Source: Fonticula alba ATCC 38817 (Eukaryota; Protista; Nucleariida). Taken from it: a DNA stretch of 26,365 nucleotides. The stretch lies in assembly GCA_000388065.2 (NCBI GenBank), contig KB932217.1, one strand, 5' to 3'. Of this stretch, positions 6,176-12,378 are shown piece by piece (the first letter of the stretch is position 1; each line of letters opens with the position of its first letter). Made by a program: the position numbers and the translations under genes. The notes beneath the pieces were generated by a model, which saw only the letters and a program-made list of their open reading frames with translations, was not told where the DNA came from and searched no databases.

Positions 6176-8498
6176 TTAGAAGCCCGCGGCCTGGAGAGCC
6201 TGGCGCAGGGCCGCGATCTTCTTGTGAACGTCGGCAATCTGCCCGGCCACCAGGTCCACGTCCAGAGTGAAGACCTTGACCTTCTTGTCGGTGGCGCGGC
6301 GATCGAAGGCCCGGATGGCCTGGAGCAGGGCCCCGGCATCCTTCAGCAGGTCGGCCTCGGTGGAGAAGCGCTCGTAGAGCTCCTTGTTCCGGCGCATGGT
6401 GGTCAGCAGGTCATCCACCTCGGCATGCTTGACATTGGCAATGGGCGACGGGGCGGCCGGGTCCTCGCGGTGGGAGACCACCAACGAAGAGAAGGCCGAC
6501 AGCATCTGGGAGTACTCGCTGGCGGCGATGTCCTTGGGACTGGACTCCACCAGGGCGCCCTGGCGCCAGCGGAAGAGCCCGGCCGCCGCGGGGGACAGGT
6601 TGGCCAGGTCGTCGGGGCCGTCCTCGGCCCCGGCCGGCTTCTCCGGCAGCAGCGACAGGAGCTTGTTCTTGGAGGGATTCAGCGTGCCGCTGGTGATGGA
6701 AGTGCGAGCCTTGCGCACGGCATCCGCGCCGGCATTCACCTGGCGCAGGGTCTCATCCAGCGCCTCCATGTGGCTGAGGAGCCCGCCCTCCAGGGGGGCC
6801 GTGGCCTCCGGGCTGGCGGCCAACACCGCCGGGAAGAGCTGGCGGTCCAGCTGACGCACGCGCGCCAGCACCTCGGCCACCAGGTCCGCCGCATCGGCCG
6901 CCACCTCGTTGGGGATCCACACCGGGGCGATGATATCCACCAGGCCAGCGGGCAGGAAGCCGGCCATGAAGTCGGTGGCAAAGTTCTTGAGGTCACCCGG
7001 GTGGATCTGGGTGGGGAAGGGAGGGGGGATCCGGGAGATAGGTGTGAACGGCGAGAGGGAGGAAAGATGGGCAGGGGGGGCGGAGGGGGAGGAGGGGGCG
7101 GAGAGAGTAGAGAAGACAGAGAAGACAGGAAAGGCAAAAAAACAGAGAAGACAGAAAAGGCAAAAAAACAGAGAAGACAGAAAAGGCAAAAAAAAAACAG
7201 AGAAGACAGAAAAGGCAAAAAAAAAACAGAGAAGACAGGAAAGGCAAAAAAACAGAAAAGCAGAGAAGACAGAAAAGCAGAGAAGACAGAAAAGCAGAAA
7301 AATAGAGAAGACGGAAAGGACGGAAGGAACAGAGCAAGGTCAGCAAGCGCGGCCCATGGCAACGGCACACACGCATCCGGGCAGAGAAGAGACACCCAGG
7401 CACAGCGCGCACCTTCTTGTCGGCGAAGTTGACGCCCACATCAGCCAGGGGGAAAAGCCCCGGGGCCGAGGCCTCCAGGCTGGCCCGCAGGGCGGCCGTC
7501 TGCTCCGGGAAGTGAGCCAGCACCGGGGCCACCACATGCTGCACAAAGGCCAGCAGGACATTGCGCGTGGTGTTGCCCTCCTCGCAGAAGATGGCACGCA
7601 CGGCCTTCTGCGTGGCCGAGCGCCCGCCATCCAGGAAGGGAGTGGTCCGGGCCGCCGCGCCGAACAGCTGCCCCGAGGACAGGTCCGACACAAAGCGCGA
7701 GGTCAGGTGCGCGCTCGGGATGGCCAGCGTCCCGGTCGACGAGCCGGCCAGGTTCGACAGCTGGGTCACCTTGTAGTCGGACAGATGCCGGCGGCCGAAC
7801 TGGAAGATGGAGATCTGCTCCAGCCCGCCCACCTGCACATCGGCCCCGAGGAAGAGCCCGTTCAGCCCGCGGAAGAGGGGGCTCAGATCGCGCGACAAGA
7901 CCGACGCCGCGGCCGGATCGAACCCCAGGCTCATGGACATGGCCTCGCGCTCGGTCACCATGTTGGTCAGCCGGTAGAAGTCCATCATGTAGGAGGGGTT
8001 CTCCAGGAGCTCCTGCCCGTGGTGGAAGCGCACAGCCGCGGCGTCCAGGCCGAGGTGCCCCAGCAGGGTGGAGATGATGGACTGCGGCAGGGGGCGAGGG
8101 ACGCGAAGGGGGGGGGGGGGGGGAGGTGCCGTCGCCAAGGTCAGGGCACAGCCACCGGGCAGGGGGAGAACGGGCAAGCGAGGAGCCGGGGAAAAGGCGC
8201 CCACAGCCGAGCAGGGCAACAGGCAGAAGGCAGGGGGGAGGAGACACGCACCTGGTAGGCCAGCGACCGCGCGCGGATCTTGTCCAGGGACGCAGGGTTG
8301 TTCATGAAGGCGTGGAGCTCATCCAGGTGGACGATCACCTGCGCGCCGGCCTTCAGCAGCAGGGCCATCGTCACCACCGGGAACAGCAGGTCCATGCTGG
8401 GCTTCGGCAGGGGCGACAGGGAGAAGAGGACCTTCAGCTCGGTGACGGGCTTCTTGGGCAGGGTGCCCAGGAGCTTGTAGTCGCAGTTGAGCCACGAC
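6176..8498 (-). CDS. Tyrosyl-tRNA synthetase-like protein, predicted catalytically inactive, with C-terminal helical/coiled-coil extension (5' end missing)
   Basis: Exons (minus): 8498->8252, 8081->7413, 7006->6176 (TAA); more than 580 aa with no internal stop. Aligns by eye to TyrRS: LLKAGAQVIVHLDELHAF, DVQVGGLEQISIF, FCEEGNTTRNVLLAFVQHVVAP, IHPGDLKN. HIGH reads SMDL and KMSAS reads QLFGA. The phase-2 acceptor at 8499-8500 implies an upstream exon, probably in gap 8533-8977. Confidence 0.85.
7100..7320. repeat. Purine-rich minisatellite (about 27-30 bp unit AGAGAAGACAG(A/G)AAAGGCAAAAAAAC) in intron 7007-7412
   Basis: About 5 near-identical units with variable A-run length, followed by shorter AGAGAAGACAGAAAAGC units. 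Confidence 0.88.
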
Positions 8499-8532
8499 CT
8501 GAGCGCGCGCGCGTGTGTGTGTGTGGGGGGGG

Positions 8533-8977
8533 NNNNNNNNNNNNNNNNNNNNNNNNNNNNNNNNNNNNNNNNNNNNNNNNNNNNNNNNNNNNNNNNNNNN
8601 NNNNNNNNNNNNNNNNNNNNNNNNNNNNNNNNNNNNNNNNNNNNNNNNNNNNNNNNNNNNNNNNNNNNNNNNNNNNNNNNNNNNNNNNNNNNNNNNNNNN
8701 NNNNNNNNNNNNNNNNNNNNNNNNNNNNNNNNNNNNNNNNNNNNNNNNNNNNNNNNNNNNNNNNNNNNNNNNNNNNNNNNNNNNNNNNNNNNNNNNNNNN
8801 NNNNNNNNNNNNNNNNNNNNNNNNNNNNNNNNNNNNNNNNNNNNNNNNNNNNNNNNNNNNNNNNNNNNNNNNNNNNNNNNNNNNNNNNNNNNNNNNNNNN
8901 NNNNNNNNNNNNNNNNNNNNNNNNNNNNNNNNNNNNNNNNNNNNNNNNNNNNNNNNNNNNNNNNNNNNNNNNNNNNN
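8533..8977. other. Assembly gap (445 N), likely containing the first exon of the TyrRS-like gene
   Basis: N run preceded by poly-G; the adjacent exon begins with a phase-2 acceptor. Confidence 0.95.
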
Positions 8978-9502
8978 GTGGGTGTGGCTCCGGCCGGGGC
9001 GCCAGGCCGGGCCGGGCCTCGCCACACGGGGCCGCGGCCCTGCTCATGCCGCTGCCGCTGCCGCTCGCCCTTCCAGGTGGCATGCCCCCCCGCGCGCAGG
9101 GCGGGGAATCGGTCGTGCGCACCGCACGGGGAACGCCGCGGCCGAAGTCGGCGGATTTCCTGCGCCCGAGGGTTGGCATCTCGGCCGACGGACGACCTGG
9201 TCCGCACCTGCGCATGCCTGCCCCGGTGCGCGGAGGTGGCGTGTCCCCGCCCCCCCCTTGCCGGTGGTTCTCCGGCCACCGCCCCCGGCAGCCCGGGCCC
9301 CCGCCACCGCGGGAACGTCTGCGCGGGCCTGCCCCCCCCCCCCCTCGCCCCGGCCCCGCCAGGCCGGCGAGGTGGCCCTTGGCCCCATGCCGTGCGGGCG
9401 CAAATGTGCCCAGAATGCCCCCCCGCCCCCCGGGTGGGAGAGAAAAGGCCGCCCCCGGGCGTCCCTGGCGCGCGCGCTGGGCCCTCATCGTCCCCGACGC
9501 CC
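8978..9502. promoter_or_regulatory. Probable bidirectional promoter region between the divergent TyrRS-like and TyrRS genes
   Basis: Position only: GC-rich sequence with no recognisable ORF between two divergent 5' ends. No core-promoter motif identified; flanked by gaps. Confidence 0.4.
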
Positions 9503-9781
9503 NNNNNNNNNNNNNNNNNNNNNNNNNNNNNNNNNNNNNNNNNNNNNNNNNNNNNNNNNNNNNNNNNNNNNNNNNNNNNNNNNNNNNNNNNNNNNNNNNN
9601 NNNNNNNNNNNNNNNNNNNNNNNNNNNNNNNNNNNNNNNNNNNNNNNNNNNNNNNNNNNNNNNNNNNNNNNNNNNNNNNNNNNNNNNNNNNNNNNNNNNN
9701 NNNNNNNNNNNNNNNNNNNNNNNNNNNNNNNNNNNNNNNNNNNNNNNNNNNNNNNNNNNNNNNNNNNNNNNNNNNNNNNNN
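9503..9781. other. Assembly gap (279 N)
   Basis: N run ending 19 nt before the TyrRS ATG. Confidence 0.99.
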
Positions 9782-9800
9782 CCGGCGCCACAGCGCCAGC

Positions 9801-10961
9801 ATGGACTCGATCGAGCTGATCACCAAGAACTTGCAGGAGCACCTGTCCATCAACATCCTGGCCGACGCGCTGAACCGCCAGGATGACGCGGCCCGAATCT
9901 ACTGGGGCACTGCGCCGACCGGCAAGCCGCACATCGGCTACTTCGTGCCGCTGGTGAAGATCGCCGAGTTCCTGAAGGCCGGCTGCCAGATGACCATCCT
10001 CTTTGCCGACCTGCACGCCTTCCTGGACCACAACAAGTCCACCCTGGACGTGCTGGAGCACCGCTCCTACTACTACGAGGTGCGTGCGCCGCCTCGGGGC
10101 CCATGTCGGCGCGCACATGCACACAGATGTCACACGCACACATGCGCACACGCACACACGCACGCACACACACACGCGCGCGCCATGGCACCCTGCACCG
10201 CCGTCTCCCGACCACCTCGACTCACCCCCGCCCGTCCGCAACACACACCTGCGCGCGCGCGTCATAACACCCCGCCCCCGCCGTGCCCCCTCGGCCCACG
10301 ACACACACACACGCAGCGCGTCATCACCCAGGCCCTCGTGTCCATCGGCGTCCCCATCGACCAGCTCACCTTCTCGCGCGGCATGAGCTACCAGCTGAAG
10401 TCCGACTACTCGAAGGACGTGCTGCAGCTGTGCAAGCTGGTGTCGCTGGTGGATGCCAAGCGCGCCGGTGCCGAGGTCGTCAAGCAGGTGGACTCGCCCC
10501 TGCTGTCGGGCATGGTGTACCCCCTGCTGCAGGCCCTCGACGAGCAGTACCTCCTGGTGGACGCGCAATTTGGCGGCGTGGACCAGCGCAAGATCTTCAC
10601 CTTCGCCTACATGTTCCTCCCGCGCCTGGGCTACCGCCGCCGGGCGCACCTGCTCAACCCCATGGTCCCCGGGCTGCAGGGGGCCAAGATGTCCGCCTCG
10701 CAGGCCGACTCCAAGATTGACCTGCTGGACTCGCGCGAGACCATCTTCTCCAAGATCGCCACGGCCCAGTGCTCCCCCGGCGAGATCGAGGGCAACCCGC
10801 TGCTCTGCTTCGCGCAGTATGTCCTCTTCCCGGCGCGCGCCCTGAACCCGGCCGGCGGCCCGGTGACCCTGGCCCCGGCGGCCGGCGGCGCCCCGCGCGC
10901 CTTCGACACCTTCGACCAGCTGCGCGACGCCTTCCAGGCCGGCGAGGTACGCCCGCCCGCC

Positions 10962-10992
<31 letters not shown>

Positions 10993-12378
10993 GCCTCGGC
11001 ACCGGTCCGGGCCATGCCGCCCCCTTCCTCTTGCTGCTCCCCCCATGTGCTGCGCTCGGACGTTGCAAGGCACTGACTTTCCGGCGGCGGATGGGGATCT
11101 CCCCCCTCTTCCCCCTCCCTCCTCCTCCCCTGCCCCGGCCCACCATAGGTCACCCCCGACGACCTGCGCGCCCTGGTGTCGACCGGCATCTCGGACCTGA
11201 TCGATCCCATCCGCGAGCAGTTCACCGGCGACGCGCGCTGGGCCGAGTCCGAGGCCAAGGGCTACCCCACGGCCGAGGCCACCGGGGCCGCCCCCTGCGA
11301 CGACCTGCTCGACGAGCTGGCCGCCATGGACTCGGGCAAGATGACGGCGGAGCTGGTGGCCGCCGTGGCCGAGTGGAAGGCCGGGCGCACGGCCTCCTCG
11401 GATCTCGGGCCCCTGCGCCGGGCCGTGGCCCCGGCCCTGGCCCATGAGTATGCCCACCGTCTGGCCACGGCCTCCGGCGACCGGCTGGCCGCCTTCCGCG
11501 CCCGGCTGGCCGATCAGGCCCAGCTCCGGGCCCTGGTCCAGAGCGTGGCCAGCTATGTGGCCGAGCAGCCGGCCGCCGCCGGGGCGGCCGAGGTGGATGC
11601 CACCGCCGCCGGGCCGCTCGGGCTCGGGTCCGTGGCGGCCCTGCTGACGCAGCTCCTGTCGCGCCTGCAGCCGGTGGACACTGCCGCCGCCGCCGCCGGT
11701 GGGGAGGATGGCGCTGCCGGCCTCTCGGCCGTGGCCGCCGTGCAGGGGCCCCTGGCCCAGTCGGTGGCCGACATCGGCGCCAAGGCGCCCAACTGCGACT
11801 TCGTCGACATCGGCCGGACCCTGCTGGCCGACATGGCCAGCCTGGCCGGCCTGGTGGAGCGCATTTCCGCCAACCTCACCGACGCCGACCAGGTGGCCCC
11901 CCTGCTGCTGACCCTGTGCGTGCAGCTGAAGACCCTGAGCACCAACCTGAACAGCATGCGCCCGGCGTGCGATCAGTCGCTGTCGAAGTCGCGCGCGCGC
12001 GACTTCAAGGCCAAGCTCGACCAGCTGGCCGCCCTGGCGCAGGAGCTCCTGCCCGGGTGCACCCTGCTGGCTGGGCTGCTGCAGTGTGTGGCCGCGTGGC
12101 TCGGGGCCGCCCGGCGCCTCGGCACCGAGGGCACCCTGGCCGAGGTGGCCGGCCAGCAGCCGGTGCCGGCCTTCCTGGCCGCCGTGAATGCCGACCTGCT
12201 GGCCTTCCTGGACGGCTCGTCGCAGCTGATCCTCACCTTCCCGGCGGAGCTGCTGGCCCAGATCTTCGACGTGGCCAGCGACCTGAACACCGATGTCAGC
12301 GCCTTCATCGACACGCTGGACGCGCCGTTTGTCGGCTTCCTCAGCGCCGCCATGGCTGCCCTGGAGGCGGCTGCCTAA
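9801..12378 (+). CDS. YARS1: Cytosolic tyrosyl-tRNA synthetase (yeast/animal type) with about 360-aa C-terminal helical extension
   Basis: Exons 9801-10079, 10317-10946, 11149-12378 (712 aa). ITKNLQE, IYWGTAPTGKPHIGYF (HIGH), ADLHAFLD, YPLLQALDEQYL, QFGGVDQRKIF, HLLNPMVPGLQGAKMSAS (KMSKS) and KGYP follow yeast Tys1 closely. Confidence 0.97.

What the first reader, a model, noticed from the sequence alone, without database searches (positions are those of the whole stretch)
6980..11175. Reciprocal degeneration: the dead copy keeps the anticodon motif HPxDLK while the active copy has eroded it
Seen in sequence: the paralogue reads IHPGDLKN (7006->6983), nearly the human-type VHPGDLKN. The active enzyme reads VTPDDLRA (from 11149), and its loop corresponding to yeast/human R(P/D)EK(F/W)GG reads APAAGG, lacking the aromatic residue. 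Established: in archaeal/eukaryotic TyrRS the His and Asp of HPxDLK and the aromatic residue of that loop contact anticodon G34. Inference: catalysis and anticodon reading may be partitioned between the two genes, as between the halves of the Leishmania enzyme. Caveats: yeast Tys1 also lacks the His (SPPDLK), and I see no clear aromatic loop in the paralogue either.
Basis: partly seen in the sequence, partly recalled or inferred. Interest (0 to 1): 0.7.

Follow-up and report, generated by a model that had tools for sequence, protein, structure and literature searches.

The report
Working enzyme beside its dead twin
In the amoeba Fonticula alba, the enzyme that loads tyrosine onto its tRNA sits next to a dead copy of itself that still keeps the tRNA-reading motif the working copy has partly lost, so the two may work as a pair, though this is unproven.

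Summary
The window is Fonticula alba. It carries an active cytosolic TyrRS (H696_06033, + strand, three exons) and a divergent TyrRS-like paralogue (H696_06032, - strand), head to head, with both introns at the same codon positions. IHPGDLKN (7006-6983), VTPDDLRA (from 11149) and APAAGG (10872-10889) are all there. Neither assembly gap touches a motif-bearing exon, but the paralogue's first exon is missing and the adjacency rests on scaffolding.

The paralogue is catalytically dead (HIGH, KMSKS and the tyrosine pocket are gone) yet still coding (GC3 0.91-0.98). HPGDLKN is its best-conserved block.

- For: in 112 fused double-length TyrRSs the catalytic half nearly always loses the anticodon-contact residues and the other half keeps them.
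- Against: the paralogue's anticodon domain is the more degraded overall, and its G34-stacking hairpin is predicted to be remodelled. The active enzyme keeps the hairpin scaffold and the base-specific Asp. No orthologue of the paralogue was found.

The scan noted this same stretch before (s1-065356). Verdict: a probable split-gene variant of the known asymmetric TyrRS pseudo-dimer, unproven.

The parts
9801..10079 (+). Active TyrRS (H696_06033), exon 1: start codon and HIGH signature (HIGY at 9930-9941)
   Evidence: Translation. Pfam PF00579 E 5e-17. Donor GTGCGT. The exon model equals database protein P0002.
10317..10946 (+). Active TyrRS, exon 2: tyrosine pocket, KMSAS (10686-10700), AQCSPGE (Q244 at 10767-10769, opposite yeast Phe254) and the APAAGG loop (10872-10889, opposite yeast PEKF296GG)
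   Evidence: AF2 puts the loop between strands 276-278 and 287-289, with pLDDT about 90.
11149..12378 (+). Active TyrRS, exon 3: VTPDDLRA (11149-11172; T305 P306 D307 D308), the terminal helices with LIDPIREQF, then an orphan helical extension of about 370 residues. Stop codon at 12376-12378.
   Evidence: The extension has no homologue.
8252..8497 (-). Paralogue (H696_06032), first visible exon. It is preceded by an AG acceptor (8500-8499), so an upstream exon is missing. The degenerate HIGH region is SMDL (8398-8387). The database model starts at the internal Met (8395-8393).
7413..8081 (-). Paralogue, exon 2: dead tyrosine pocket, QLFGA in place of KMSKS (7670-7656), FCEEGN (7589-7572, opposite yeast F254-C255..G258-N259) and LRASLEAS (7490-7467) where the G34-stacking hairpin loop should be
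   Evidence: (PF00579, 22.4 bits against a cutoff of 21.1)
6176..7006 (-). Paralogue, exon 3: IHPGDLKN (7006-6983; H273 P274 G275 D276), then an orphan helical extension of about 250 residues. Stop codon at 6178-6176.
7007..7412 (-). Paralogue, intron 2, at the same codon position as intron 2 of the active gene (10947-11148). It holds a 26-nt tandem repeat (7116-7317).
8082..8251 (-). Paralogue, intron 1, at the same codon position as intron 1 of the active gene (10080-10316)
8498..9800 (.). Divergent intergenic or 5' region shared by the two genes. It consists of two assembly gaps (8533-8977, 9503-9781) around a 525-nt island. The paralogue's first exon must lie here or be unassembled.

Best explanation
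An ancestral intron-bearing cytosolic TyrRS gene duplicated into a head-to-head pair.

One copy, H696_06033, remains the working enzyme. The other, H696_06032, has lost every catalytic signature but is still kept as a protein. It has a TyrRS fold, a recognisable dimerisation and CP1 region, and two well-preserved anticodon-contact elements (FC..GN and HPGDLK).

The most likely mechanism, which is inferred and not shown, is an asymmetric heterodimer formed through the ordinary TyrRS dimer interface. One tRNA-Tyr lies across it. Its acceptor end sits in the active subunit and its anticodon loop sits on the dead subunit's C-terminal domain. This would be a two-gene version of the fused Leishmania-type pseudo-dimer.

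The partition is incomplete. The active subunit has lost the residues that stack on or pack against the anticodon bases (yeast F254, F296, Pro320, and the M. jannaschii His). It keeps an intact hairpin scaffold and the base-specific Asp, so it can probably still work as a homodimer with weaker anticodon reading.
For: Shown:
- Identity of the two genes and of the organism.
- Same intron positions in both genes.
- Paralogue dead at HIGH, KMSKS and the tyrosine pocket.
- Paralogue coding: GC3 0.91-0.98 in exons against 0.53-0.77 in introns, and the frame is kept over about 310 aligned codons at 25% identity.
- TyrRS fold, with pLDDT 85-95 for the Rossmann/CP1 part and 84-94 for the C-domain. Foldseek TM by target is 0.68 to human and yeast TyrRS.
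- HPGDLKN is the paralogue's best-conserved window and FCEEGN is among the next best.
- Active enzyme: Q244, A282, T305 and D307 at the yeast F254, F296, S318 and P320 positions.

Comparative:
- In 112 fused double-length TyrRSs the catalytic half has F at yeast-254 in 0, His in 0, and no loop in 107.
- The other half has F in 108, His in 110, Asp in 110 and the loop in 111.
- The C-domain score is higher in the non-catalytic half in 105 of 112.
- The paralogue's CP1 match to consensus (0.36) equals that of halves known to pair (0.32).
- Triple loss of the contact residues is rare in single-domain proteins (6/58). At least two of the six are fungal sequences that look like extra copies.
- The active enzyme groups with catalytic halves only when C-domain columns are included.

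Established:
- tRNA-Tyr binds across the two subunits, and the contact residues are known (PMC1934993).
- An active aaRS pairs with a dead paralogue in SLIMP-SerRS2 (PMC9437257).
Against: - There is no physical or expression evidence.
- The paralogue's C-domain is the most degraded of all copies compared: 42 bits, the 2nd percentile of every class.
- The paralogue lacks the aromatic/Asn-GG loop that 111 of 112 anticodon-reading halves keep. AF2 predicts a helix there. It also lacks the LLDPIRExF helix.
- The active enzyme's C-domain scores 86 bits (21st percentile of singles). It has no deletion, a confident hairpin, and keeps GG, Pro306 and Asp308.
- The anticodon is the weaker identity element for yeast and M. 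jannaschii TyrRS, so erosion may need no compensation.
- No orthologue of the paralogue appeared among 1.84 billion representatives, so its conservation cannot be tested.
- Adjacency rests on a scaffold with two gaps.
Confidence: 0.42

Rival explanations
1. There is no division of labour. The active enzyme works alone as an ordinary homodimer. It reads tRNA-Tyr mainly through C1-G72 and A73, plus the retained Asp308 contact to G34. The paralogue is a free-standing pseudoenzyme with another role, such as tRNA binding, buffering or regulation, or something carried by its helical extension. On this view HPGDLK and FC..GN are kept for tRNA binding or folding rather than for aminoacylation.
For: - The active C-domain is intact in scaffold and keeps Asp308, GG and Pro306.
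- The anticodon is the minor identity element.
- Yeast also lacks the His.
- 6 of 58 single-domain TyrRS-family proteins share the triple loss, and about nine keep HPxDLK-type motifs without the loop.
- The paralogue's C-domain is badly degraded and its hairpin remodelled.
- The two genes carry unrelated long extensions.
- GC pressure favours Ala, Gly and Pro at weakly constrained surface sites such as APAAGG.
Against: - It does not explain why the active enzyme's losses fall on the same positions that catalytic halves of fused enzymes lose.
- It does not explain why the paralogue keeps the positions that the reading halves keep.
- It does not explain why the dimerisation region stays as conserved as in halves known to pair.
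Confidence: 0.4
2. The paralogue is a decaying pseudogene or a mis-annotated relic, and the HPGDLKN match is a leftover.
For: - It has no known orthologue.
- It sits on a very long branch of 4.6 changes per column.
- Its start codon and first exon are not in the assembly.
- Long open frames are common in this GC-rich genome.
Against: - Exon GC3 is 0.91-0.98 with GC2 0.35-0.46, against flat composition in the introns.
- All splice sites are canonical and at the parental positions.
- There is no frameshift or stop over 581 codons despite about 75% residue replacement.
- The AF2 fold is confident.
- Conservation is concentrated in functional blocks.
Confidence: 0.06
3. The two genes are not really neighbours. 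The head-to-head arrangement is a scaffolding artefact across the two gaps, so shared regulation cannot be inferred.
For: Two N gaps separate the genes, with only a 525-nt island between them. No reads could be laid.
Against: The public record gives them consecutive locus tags on one 355-kb scaffold. This rival does not affect the motif observations or the paralogy.
Confidence: 0.1

Closest known systems
Double-length TyrRS pseudo-dimer of trypanosomatids (Leishmania major, PDB 3P0H/3P0J; T. brucei)
   Same: Both have two diverged TyrRS modules, one catalytic and one dead. The dead one keeps the anticodon-reading motif and the catalytic one has an impaired anticodon site. The tRNA spans both modules (PMC8319005; PMC5370408).
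   Different: In Fonticula the modules are two separate, divergently transcribed genes, each with its own long orphan extension. The catalytic module's anticodon domain has substitutions, not the six-residue deletion seen in Leishmania. The dead module has lost the stacking hairpin loop. Association of the two proteins is not shown.
Fused double-length TyrRSs of nematodes, crustaceans, mites and flatworms (for example C. elegans P0099, Tetranychus P0007, Penaeus P0023)
   Same: They show the same residue-level signature. The catalytic half lacks yeast-F254, the His and the loop. The other half keeps F254, HPxDLK and the loop. Catalytic halves of mites read L(S/T)PDDLK, close to Fonticula's VTPDDLR.
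   Different: They are single polypeptides. Their reading halves keep the R..x(aromatic/N)GG loop in 111 of 112 and score about 103 bits on the C-domain, against 42 for the Fonticula paralogue.
SLIMP-SerRS2 heterodimer of insect mitochondria
   Same: It is a two-gene system. A catalytically dead aaRS paralogue that still binds tRNA forms a heterodimer with the active enzyme (PMC9437257).
   Different: It is a class II SerRS, it is conserved across insects, and it has added non-translational roles. It does not partition the anticodon site.
Canonical eukaryotic cytosolic TyrRS (yeast Tys1, 2DLC; human YARS1, 1N3L)
   Same: The active Fonticula enzyme is an ordinary member in its catalytic core (E about 1e-64 to human). 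Like yeast, it lacks the His.
   Different: It lacks yeast F254, F296 and P320 equivalents. It carries a helical extension of about 370 residues instead of nothing (yeast) or an EMAPII-like domain (animals).

Membership tests
Archaeal/eukaryotic-type TyrRS (class Ic, Pfam PF00579): active gene H696_06033 | HIGH and KMSKS signatures | tested here: met
   HIGY (residues 44-47) and KMSAS (217-221) are present.
Archaeal/eukaryotic-type TyrRS (class Ic, Pfam PF00579): active gene H696_06033 | Tyrosine-pocket residues (Y34, Y161, Q165, D168, Q177) and family-level sequence match | tested here: met
   All are at the family's near-invariant columns. Pfam E values are 5e-17 and 4.6e-28. PDB human TyrRS matches at E 5e-64.
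Archaeal/eukaryotic-type TyrRS (class Ic, Pfam PF00579): active gene H696_06033 | Full set of anticodon-contact residues (yeast F254, P257, F296, P319, P320, D321) | tested here: not met
   The six positions read Q244, P247, A282, P306, D307, D308. Three of six are kept.
Archaeal/eukaryotic-type TyrRS: paralogue H696_06032 | TyrRS fold and family-level sequence match | tested here: met
   Foldseek TM by target is 0.68, E 8e-11, to human and yeast TyrRS. PF00579 scores 22.4 bits against a cutoff of 21.1 on exon 2. PDB yeast matches at E 1.6e-13.
Archaeal/eukaryotic-type TyrRS: paralogue H696_06032 | HIGH, KMSKS and the tyrosine pocket | tested here: not met
   The paralogue has SMDL, QLFGA, and S115/R119/N122 in their place. 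It is TyrRS-like, not a TyrRS.
Asymmetric TyrRS pseudo-dimer (Leishmania type) | Two TyrRS modules in one polypeptide | tested here: not met
   These are two genes on opposite strands.
Asymmetric TyrRS pseudo-dimer (Leishmania type) | One module is catalytic with an impaired anticodon site | tested here: inconclusive
   The stacking and packing residues are lost, but the scaffold, GG and Asp are kept. The C-domain scores 86 bits, within the range of catalytic halves (median 78) and in the low range of singles.
Asymmetric TyrRS pseudo-dimer (Leishmania type) | The other module is dead but keeps the anticodon site | tested here: inconclusive
   The module is dead. FC..GN and HPGDLK are kept, but the hairpin loop is lost and the C-domain scores only 42 bits.
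Asymmetric TyrRS pseudo-dimer (Leishmania type) | The two modules pack as a TyrRS dimer | not testable with these tools
   Only single-chain prediction is on offer. CP1 conservation is compatible with pairing.
Two-gene aaRS / dead-paralogue heterodimer (SLIMP type) | Separate genes, with the paralogue catalytically dead | tested here: met
Two-gene aaRS / dead-paralogue heterodimer (SLIMP type) | Paralogue conserved in related species | tested here: inconclusive
   The exhaustive search found only the protein itself below 1e-30. Nucleariid sampling in the library is unknown.
Two-gene aaRS / dead-paralogue heterodimer (SLIMP type) | Physical heterodimer | not testable with these tools
   No tool for this.

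The most novel reading that the evidence does not exclude
Fonticula alba makes its cytosolic Tyr-tRNA with an obligate two-gene heterodimer: a catalytic subunit that no longer grips the anticodon and a dead subunit that does. This would be the unfused counterpart, possibly an evolutionary intermediate, of the double-length TyrRS pseudo-dimers that arose repeatedly in trypanosomatids and animals. It would show that the halves of a homodimeric synthetase can specialise without gene fusion.
Probability: 0.2. Interest if true: 0.75.

Novelty: new variant of a known kind. Interest (0 to 1): 0.55.

Why it matters
TyrRS is a textbook homodimer that binds each tRNA across both subunits. Asymmetric fused pseudo-dimers are known in trypanosomatids. 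A separate-gene version has not been described in the literature I could search, and H696_06032 is annotated only as hypothetical.

If the two Fonticula proteins pair, they would show how a symmetric enzyme becomes asymmetric by duplication and complementary loss, with or without fusion. They would also add a class I example to the few active-enzyme-plus-dead-paralogue synthetase pairs, such as SLIMP.

The comparative by-product may matter independently. More than a hundred fused TyrRSs from nematodes, crustaceans, mites and flatworms show a nearly perfect residue-level split between a catalytic half and an anticodon-reading half.

Tried and rejected
Expression, the paralogue's true 5' exon and continuity across the gaps were therefore not tested, and read laying was not used.
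- Origin of the paralogue by phylogeny: its branch is 4.6 changes per column and its placement is unresolved. A Fonticula-specific duplication rests on adjacency and shared intron positions only.
- Homology between the two C-terminal extensions: none.
- Homologues of either extension: none by word-indexed search or by Atlas features or structure, where all TM scores are under 0.5. Pfam gave only sub-threshold noise.
- Word-indexed search with the paralogue's exon 2 found only the protein itself.
- The bacterial promoter and terminator scan of the intergenic region is irrelevant to a eukaryote and found nothing.
- There is no tRNA gene in the window.
- A literature search for a description of nematode, mite or crustacean double-length TyrRS gave nothing usable. 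The Larson 2011 paper itself is not held.
Full-length proteins were taken from the database (P0001, P0002). The 34 extra N-terminal codons of the paralogue were used only as an exon reference.
- I considered and rejected the idea that the window is a green alga, my first impression from GC content and CA repeats. One search identifies Fonticula alba.

Full report
WHAT IS THERE

The window is Fonticula alba, a cellular slime-mould relative of fungi. Exon 2 of the minus-strand gene retrieves only NCBI H696_06032, a 'hypothetical protein' of 547 aa (P0001), at 100% identity. The last exon of the plus-strand gene retrieves H696_06033, a tyrosine--tRNA ligase of 712 aa (P0002).

My exon models, read from the sequence:
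- Active gene, + strand: 9801-10079, 10317-10946 and 11149-12375, with the stop at 12376-12378. These give 93+210+409 = 712 aa, identical to P0002.
- Paralogue, - strand: 8497-8252, 8081-7413 and 7006-6179, with the stop at 6178-6176.

Both introns sit at the same codon positions in the two genes: after ...YYE / ...AYQ, and immediately before VTPDDLR / IHPGDLK. All four donors read GTRCGY.

The database model of the paralogue starts at an internal Met. Thirty-four further in-frame codons upstream align with the TyrRS N-terminus. They are preceded by an AG acceptor at 8500-8499, so at least one 5' exon is missing.

THE GAPS

The gaps at 8533-8977 and 9503-9781 lie in the divergent region between the two genes. 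No frame of either gene model crosses a gap, so the motifs do not depend on them.

Two things do depend on the gaps: the paralogue's start, and the claim that the genes are neighbours about 1.3 kb apart.

THE OBSERVATION

IHPGDLKN (7006-6983), VTPDDLRA (11149-11172) and APAAGG (10872-10889) are exactly as described.

Alignment to yeast TyrRS (2DLC; chain index equals residue number, checked against the paper's numbering) places them as follows:
- APAAGG lies opposite P-E-K-F296-G-G.
- T305-P306-D307-D308 lie opposite S318-P319-P320-D321.

The yeast complex paper (PMC1934993) describes the contacts:
- G34 stacks on Phe296 and contacts Pro320 on its other face. In M. jannaschii, His283 stacks there instead.
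- G34 is read base-specifically by Asp321.
- Psi35 and A36 sit in a patch of Phe254, Pro257, Pro319 and Pro320, with Cys255 giving a main-chain bond.

The active Fonticula enzyme therefore has Q244 for Phe254, A282 for Phe296, D307 for Pro320 and T305 at the His position. It keeps Cys245, Pro247, Pro306 and Asp308.

The paralogue keeps F213-C214 (FCEEGN) and H273-P274-G275-D276. It has E216 for Pro257, and LRASLEAS where the R-x-E-x-aromatic-G-G loop should be.

IS THE PARALOGUE DEAD AND REAL?

It is dead:
- HIGY is SMDL.
- The Tyr-binding Y34 is Leu.
- Y161, Q165 and D168 are S, R and N.
- KMSAS is QLFGA.

It is real:
- Exon GC3 is 0.91-0.98 with GC2 0.35-0.46, like the active gene. The introns show no such periodicity.
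- The frame is unbroken across 581 codons at 25% identity to its neighbour.
- AF2 gives pLDDT 85-95 for the Rossmann/CP1 part and 84-94 for the C-terminal domain.
- Foldseek's best matches are human and yeast TyrRS, with TM by target 0.68.
- Against a family consensus the paralogue is 26% identical overall. Its best 8-residue window is HPGDLKNF (7/8), and FCEEGN is among the next best.

The retention of the anticodon motif is therefore more than chance.

COMPARATIVE TEST OF THE IDEA

A search with the active enzyme returned many double-length TyrRSs from nematodes, crustaceans, mites, a flatworm and unnamed assemblies. I split 112 of them into halves and called the half with the higher catalytic-domain score 'catalytic'. 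The split is almost perfect.

| Feature | Catalytic half (of 112) | Other half (of 112) |
|---|---|---|
| Phe at yeast-254 | 0 | 108 (plus 3 Tyr) |
| His of HPxDLK | 0 | 110 |
| Asp321 | 42 | 110 |
| R..x(aromatic/Asn)GG loop | absent in 107 | present in 111 |

The C-domain profile score is higher in the non-catalytic half in 105 of 112. This extends the principle already published for Leishmania and T. brucei (PMC8319005; PMC5370408).

The Fonticula pair follows the signature at most contact positions. The active enzyme's VTPDDLR resembles the L(S/T)PDDLK of mite catalytic halves.

Among 58 single-domain TyrRS-family representatives, Phe or Tyr at yeast-254 is present in 49. The triple loss (no Phe/Tyr-254, no loop, no His) occurs in 6. 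At least two of these six are fungal sequences that look like extra copies, from Fusarium and the Teloschistaceae.

In a tree, the active enzyme groups with catalytic halves only when C-domain columns are included. That fits convergent relaxation, but support is weak.

WHAT SPEAKS AGAINST A CLEAN PARTITION

- On a C-domain profile the active enzyme scores 86 bits. This is the 21st percentile of singles and the 71st of catalytic halves.
- The paralogue scores only 42 bits, the 2nd percentile of every class. Reading halves of fused enzymes have a median of 103.
- The paralogue lacks the loop that 111 of 112 reading halves keep. AF2 predicts a helix (240-253) where the hairpin should be. It also lacks the LLDPIRExF helix.
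- The active enzyme has no deletion. Strands 276-278 and 287-289 flank the APAAGGAP loop at pLDDT about 90. It keeps GG and the base-specific Asp.
- The anticodon is the weaker identity element for yeast and M. jannaschii TyrRS.
- An exhaustive profile-free search of 1.84 billion representatives found no orthologue of the paralogue, so its conservation over time cannot be measured.
- Nothing shows that the two proteins touch.

MECHANISM AND ODDS

TyrRS binds one tRNA across the dimer: the acceptor stem on one subunit and the anticodon on the other. An A-P heterodimer would therefore be productive with the acceptor end in A and the anticodon on P. The paralogue's CP1/dimerisation region is as conserved as in halves known to pair (0.36 against 0.32).

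My estimates:
- About 0.42 that the paralogue pairs with the active enzyme and contributes anticodon-arm binding, with the partition incomplete.
- About 0.40 that the active enzyme works alone and the paralogue has another role, tRNA-related or otherwise.
- About 0.06 that the paralogue is a decaying relic.
- Separately, about 0.1 that the adjacency is a scaffolding artefact. This does not exclude the readings above.

COMPARISON WITH WHAT IS KNOWN

The closest systems are:
- the fused trypanosomatid pseudo-dimer, which shares the logic but is one polypeptide;
- the fused animal double-length enzymes, which share the residue signature;
- the insect SLIMP-SerRS2 pair, which is a two-gene heterodimer of an active enzyme and a dead paralogue, but of class II (PMC9437257).

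The Fonticula pair fails the 'one polypeptide' criterion of the pseudo-dimer family. It meets 'one dead module'. It is inconclusive on the two anticodon criteria. If real, it would be a new variant of a known kind. I found no paper on Fonticula synthetases that mentions it.

LIMITS

Full-length proteins came from the database.
- The reads tools could not be used.
- Both long C-terminal extensions are orphans and their role is unknown.

Noticed in passing
Related proteins P0003-P0121, not in the window: More than 110 double-length TyrRSs, with two or in one case three TyrRS modules in a single polypeptide, occur in nematodes (including C. elegans), crustaceans, mites, a flatworm and unnamed assemblies. 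The catalytic module is N-terminal in some lineages and C-terminal in others. All show a near-perfect split between a catalytic half and an anticodon-reading half. I found no description of these outside trypanosomatids and plants in the searchable library.
   Followed up: partly
window 8395-8497 (- strand): The public model of H696_06032 starts at an internal Met. Thirty-four in-frame codons upstream align with the TyrRS N-terminus and follow an AG acceptor. The protein is therefore annotated N-terminally truncated, and its first exon is in or beyond the gap at 8533-8977.
   Followed up: partly
window 11269-12375 (+) and 6179-6886 (-): Both genes carry long, Ala-rich, mostly helical C-terminal extensions of about 370 and 240 residues. 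They are unrelated to each other and have no detectable homologue or fold match. They stand where animals have an EMAPII-like domain.
   Followed up: partly
window 10080, 10947, 8251, 7412 (intron donors): All four donors of the two genes read GTRCGY (GTGCGT, GTACGC, GTGCGT, GTGCGC).
   Followed up: no
window 7116-7317: A 26-29-nt purine-rich tandem repeat (7.6 copies, 87% matches) fills intron 2 of the paralogue. The other introns carry (CA)n-like tracts.
   Followed up: no
P0205, P0209: Fusarium avenaceum and several Teloschistaceae lichen fungi have a TyrRS-family protein with intact HIGH and KMSKS that reads (V/L)TPQ(L/M)(L/I)K, so it has no Asp and no loop. These look like extra TyrRS copies that may not read the anticodon.
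   Followed up: no
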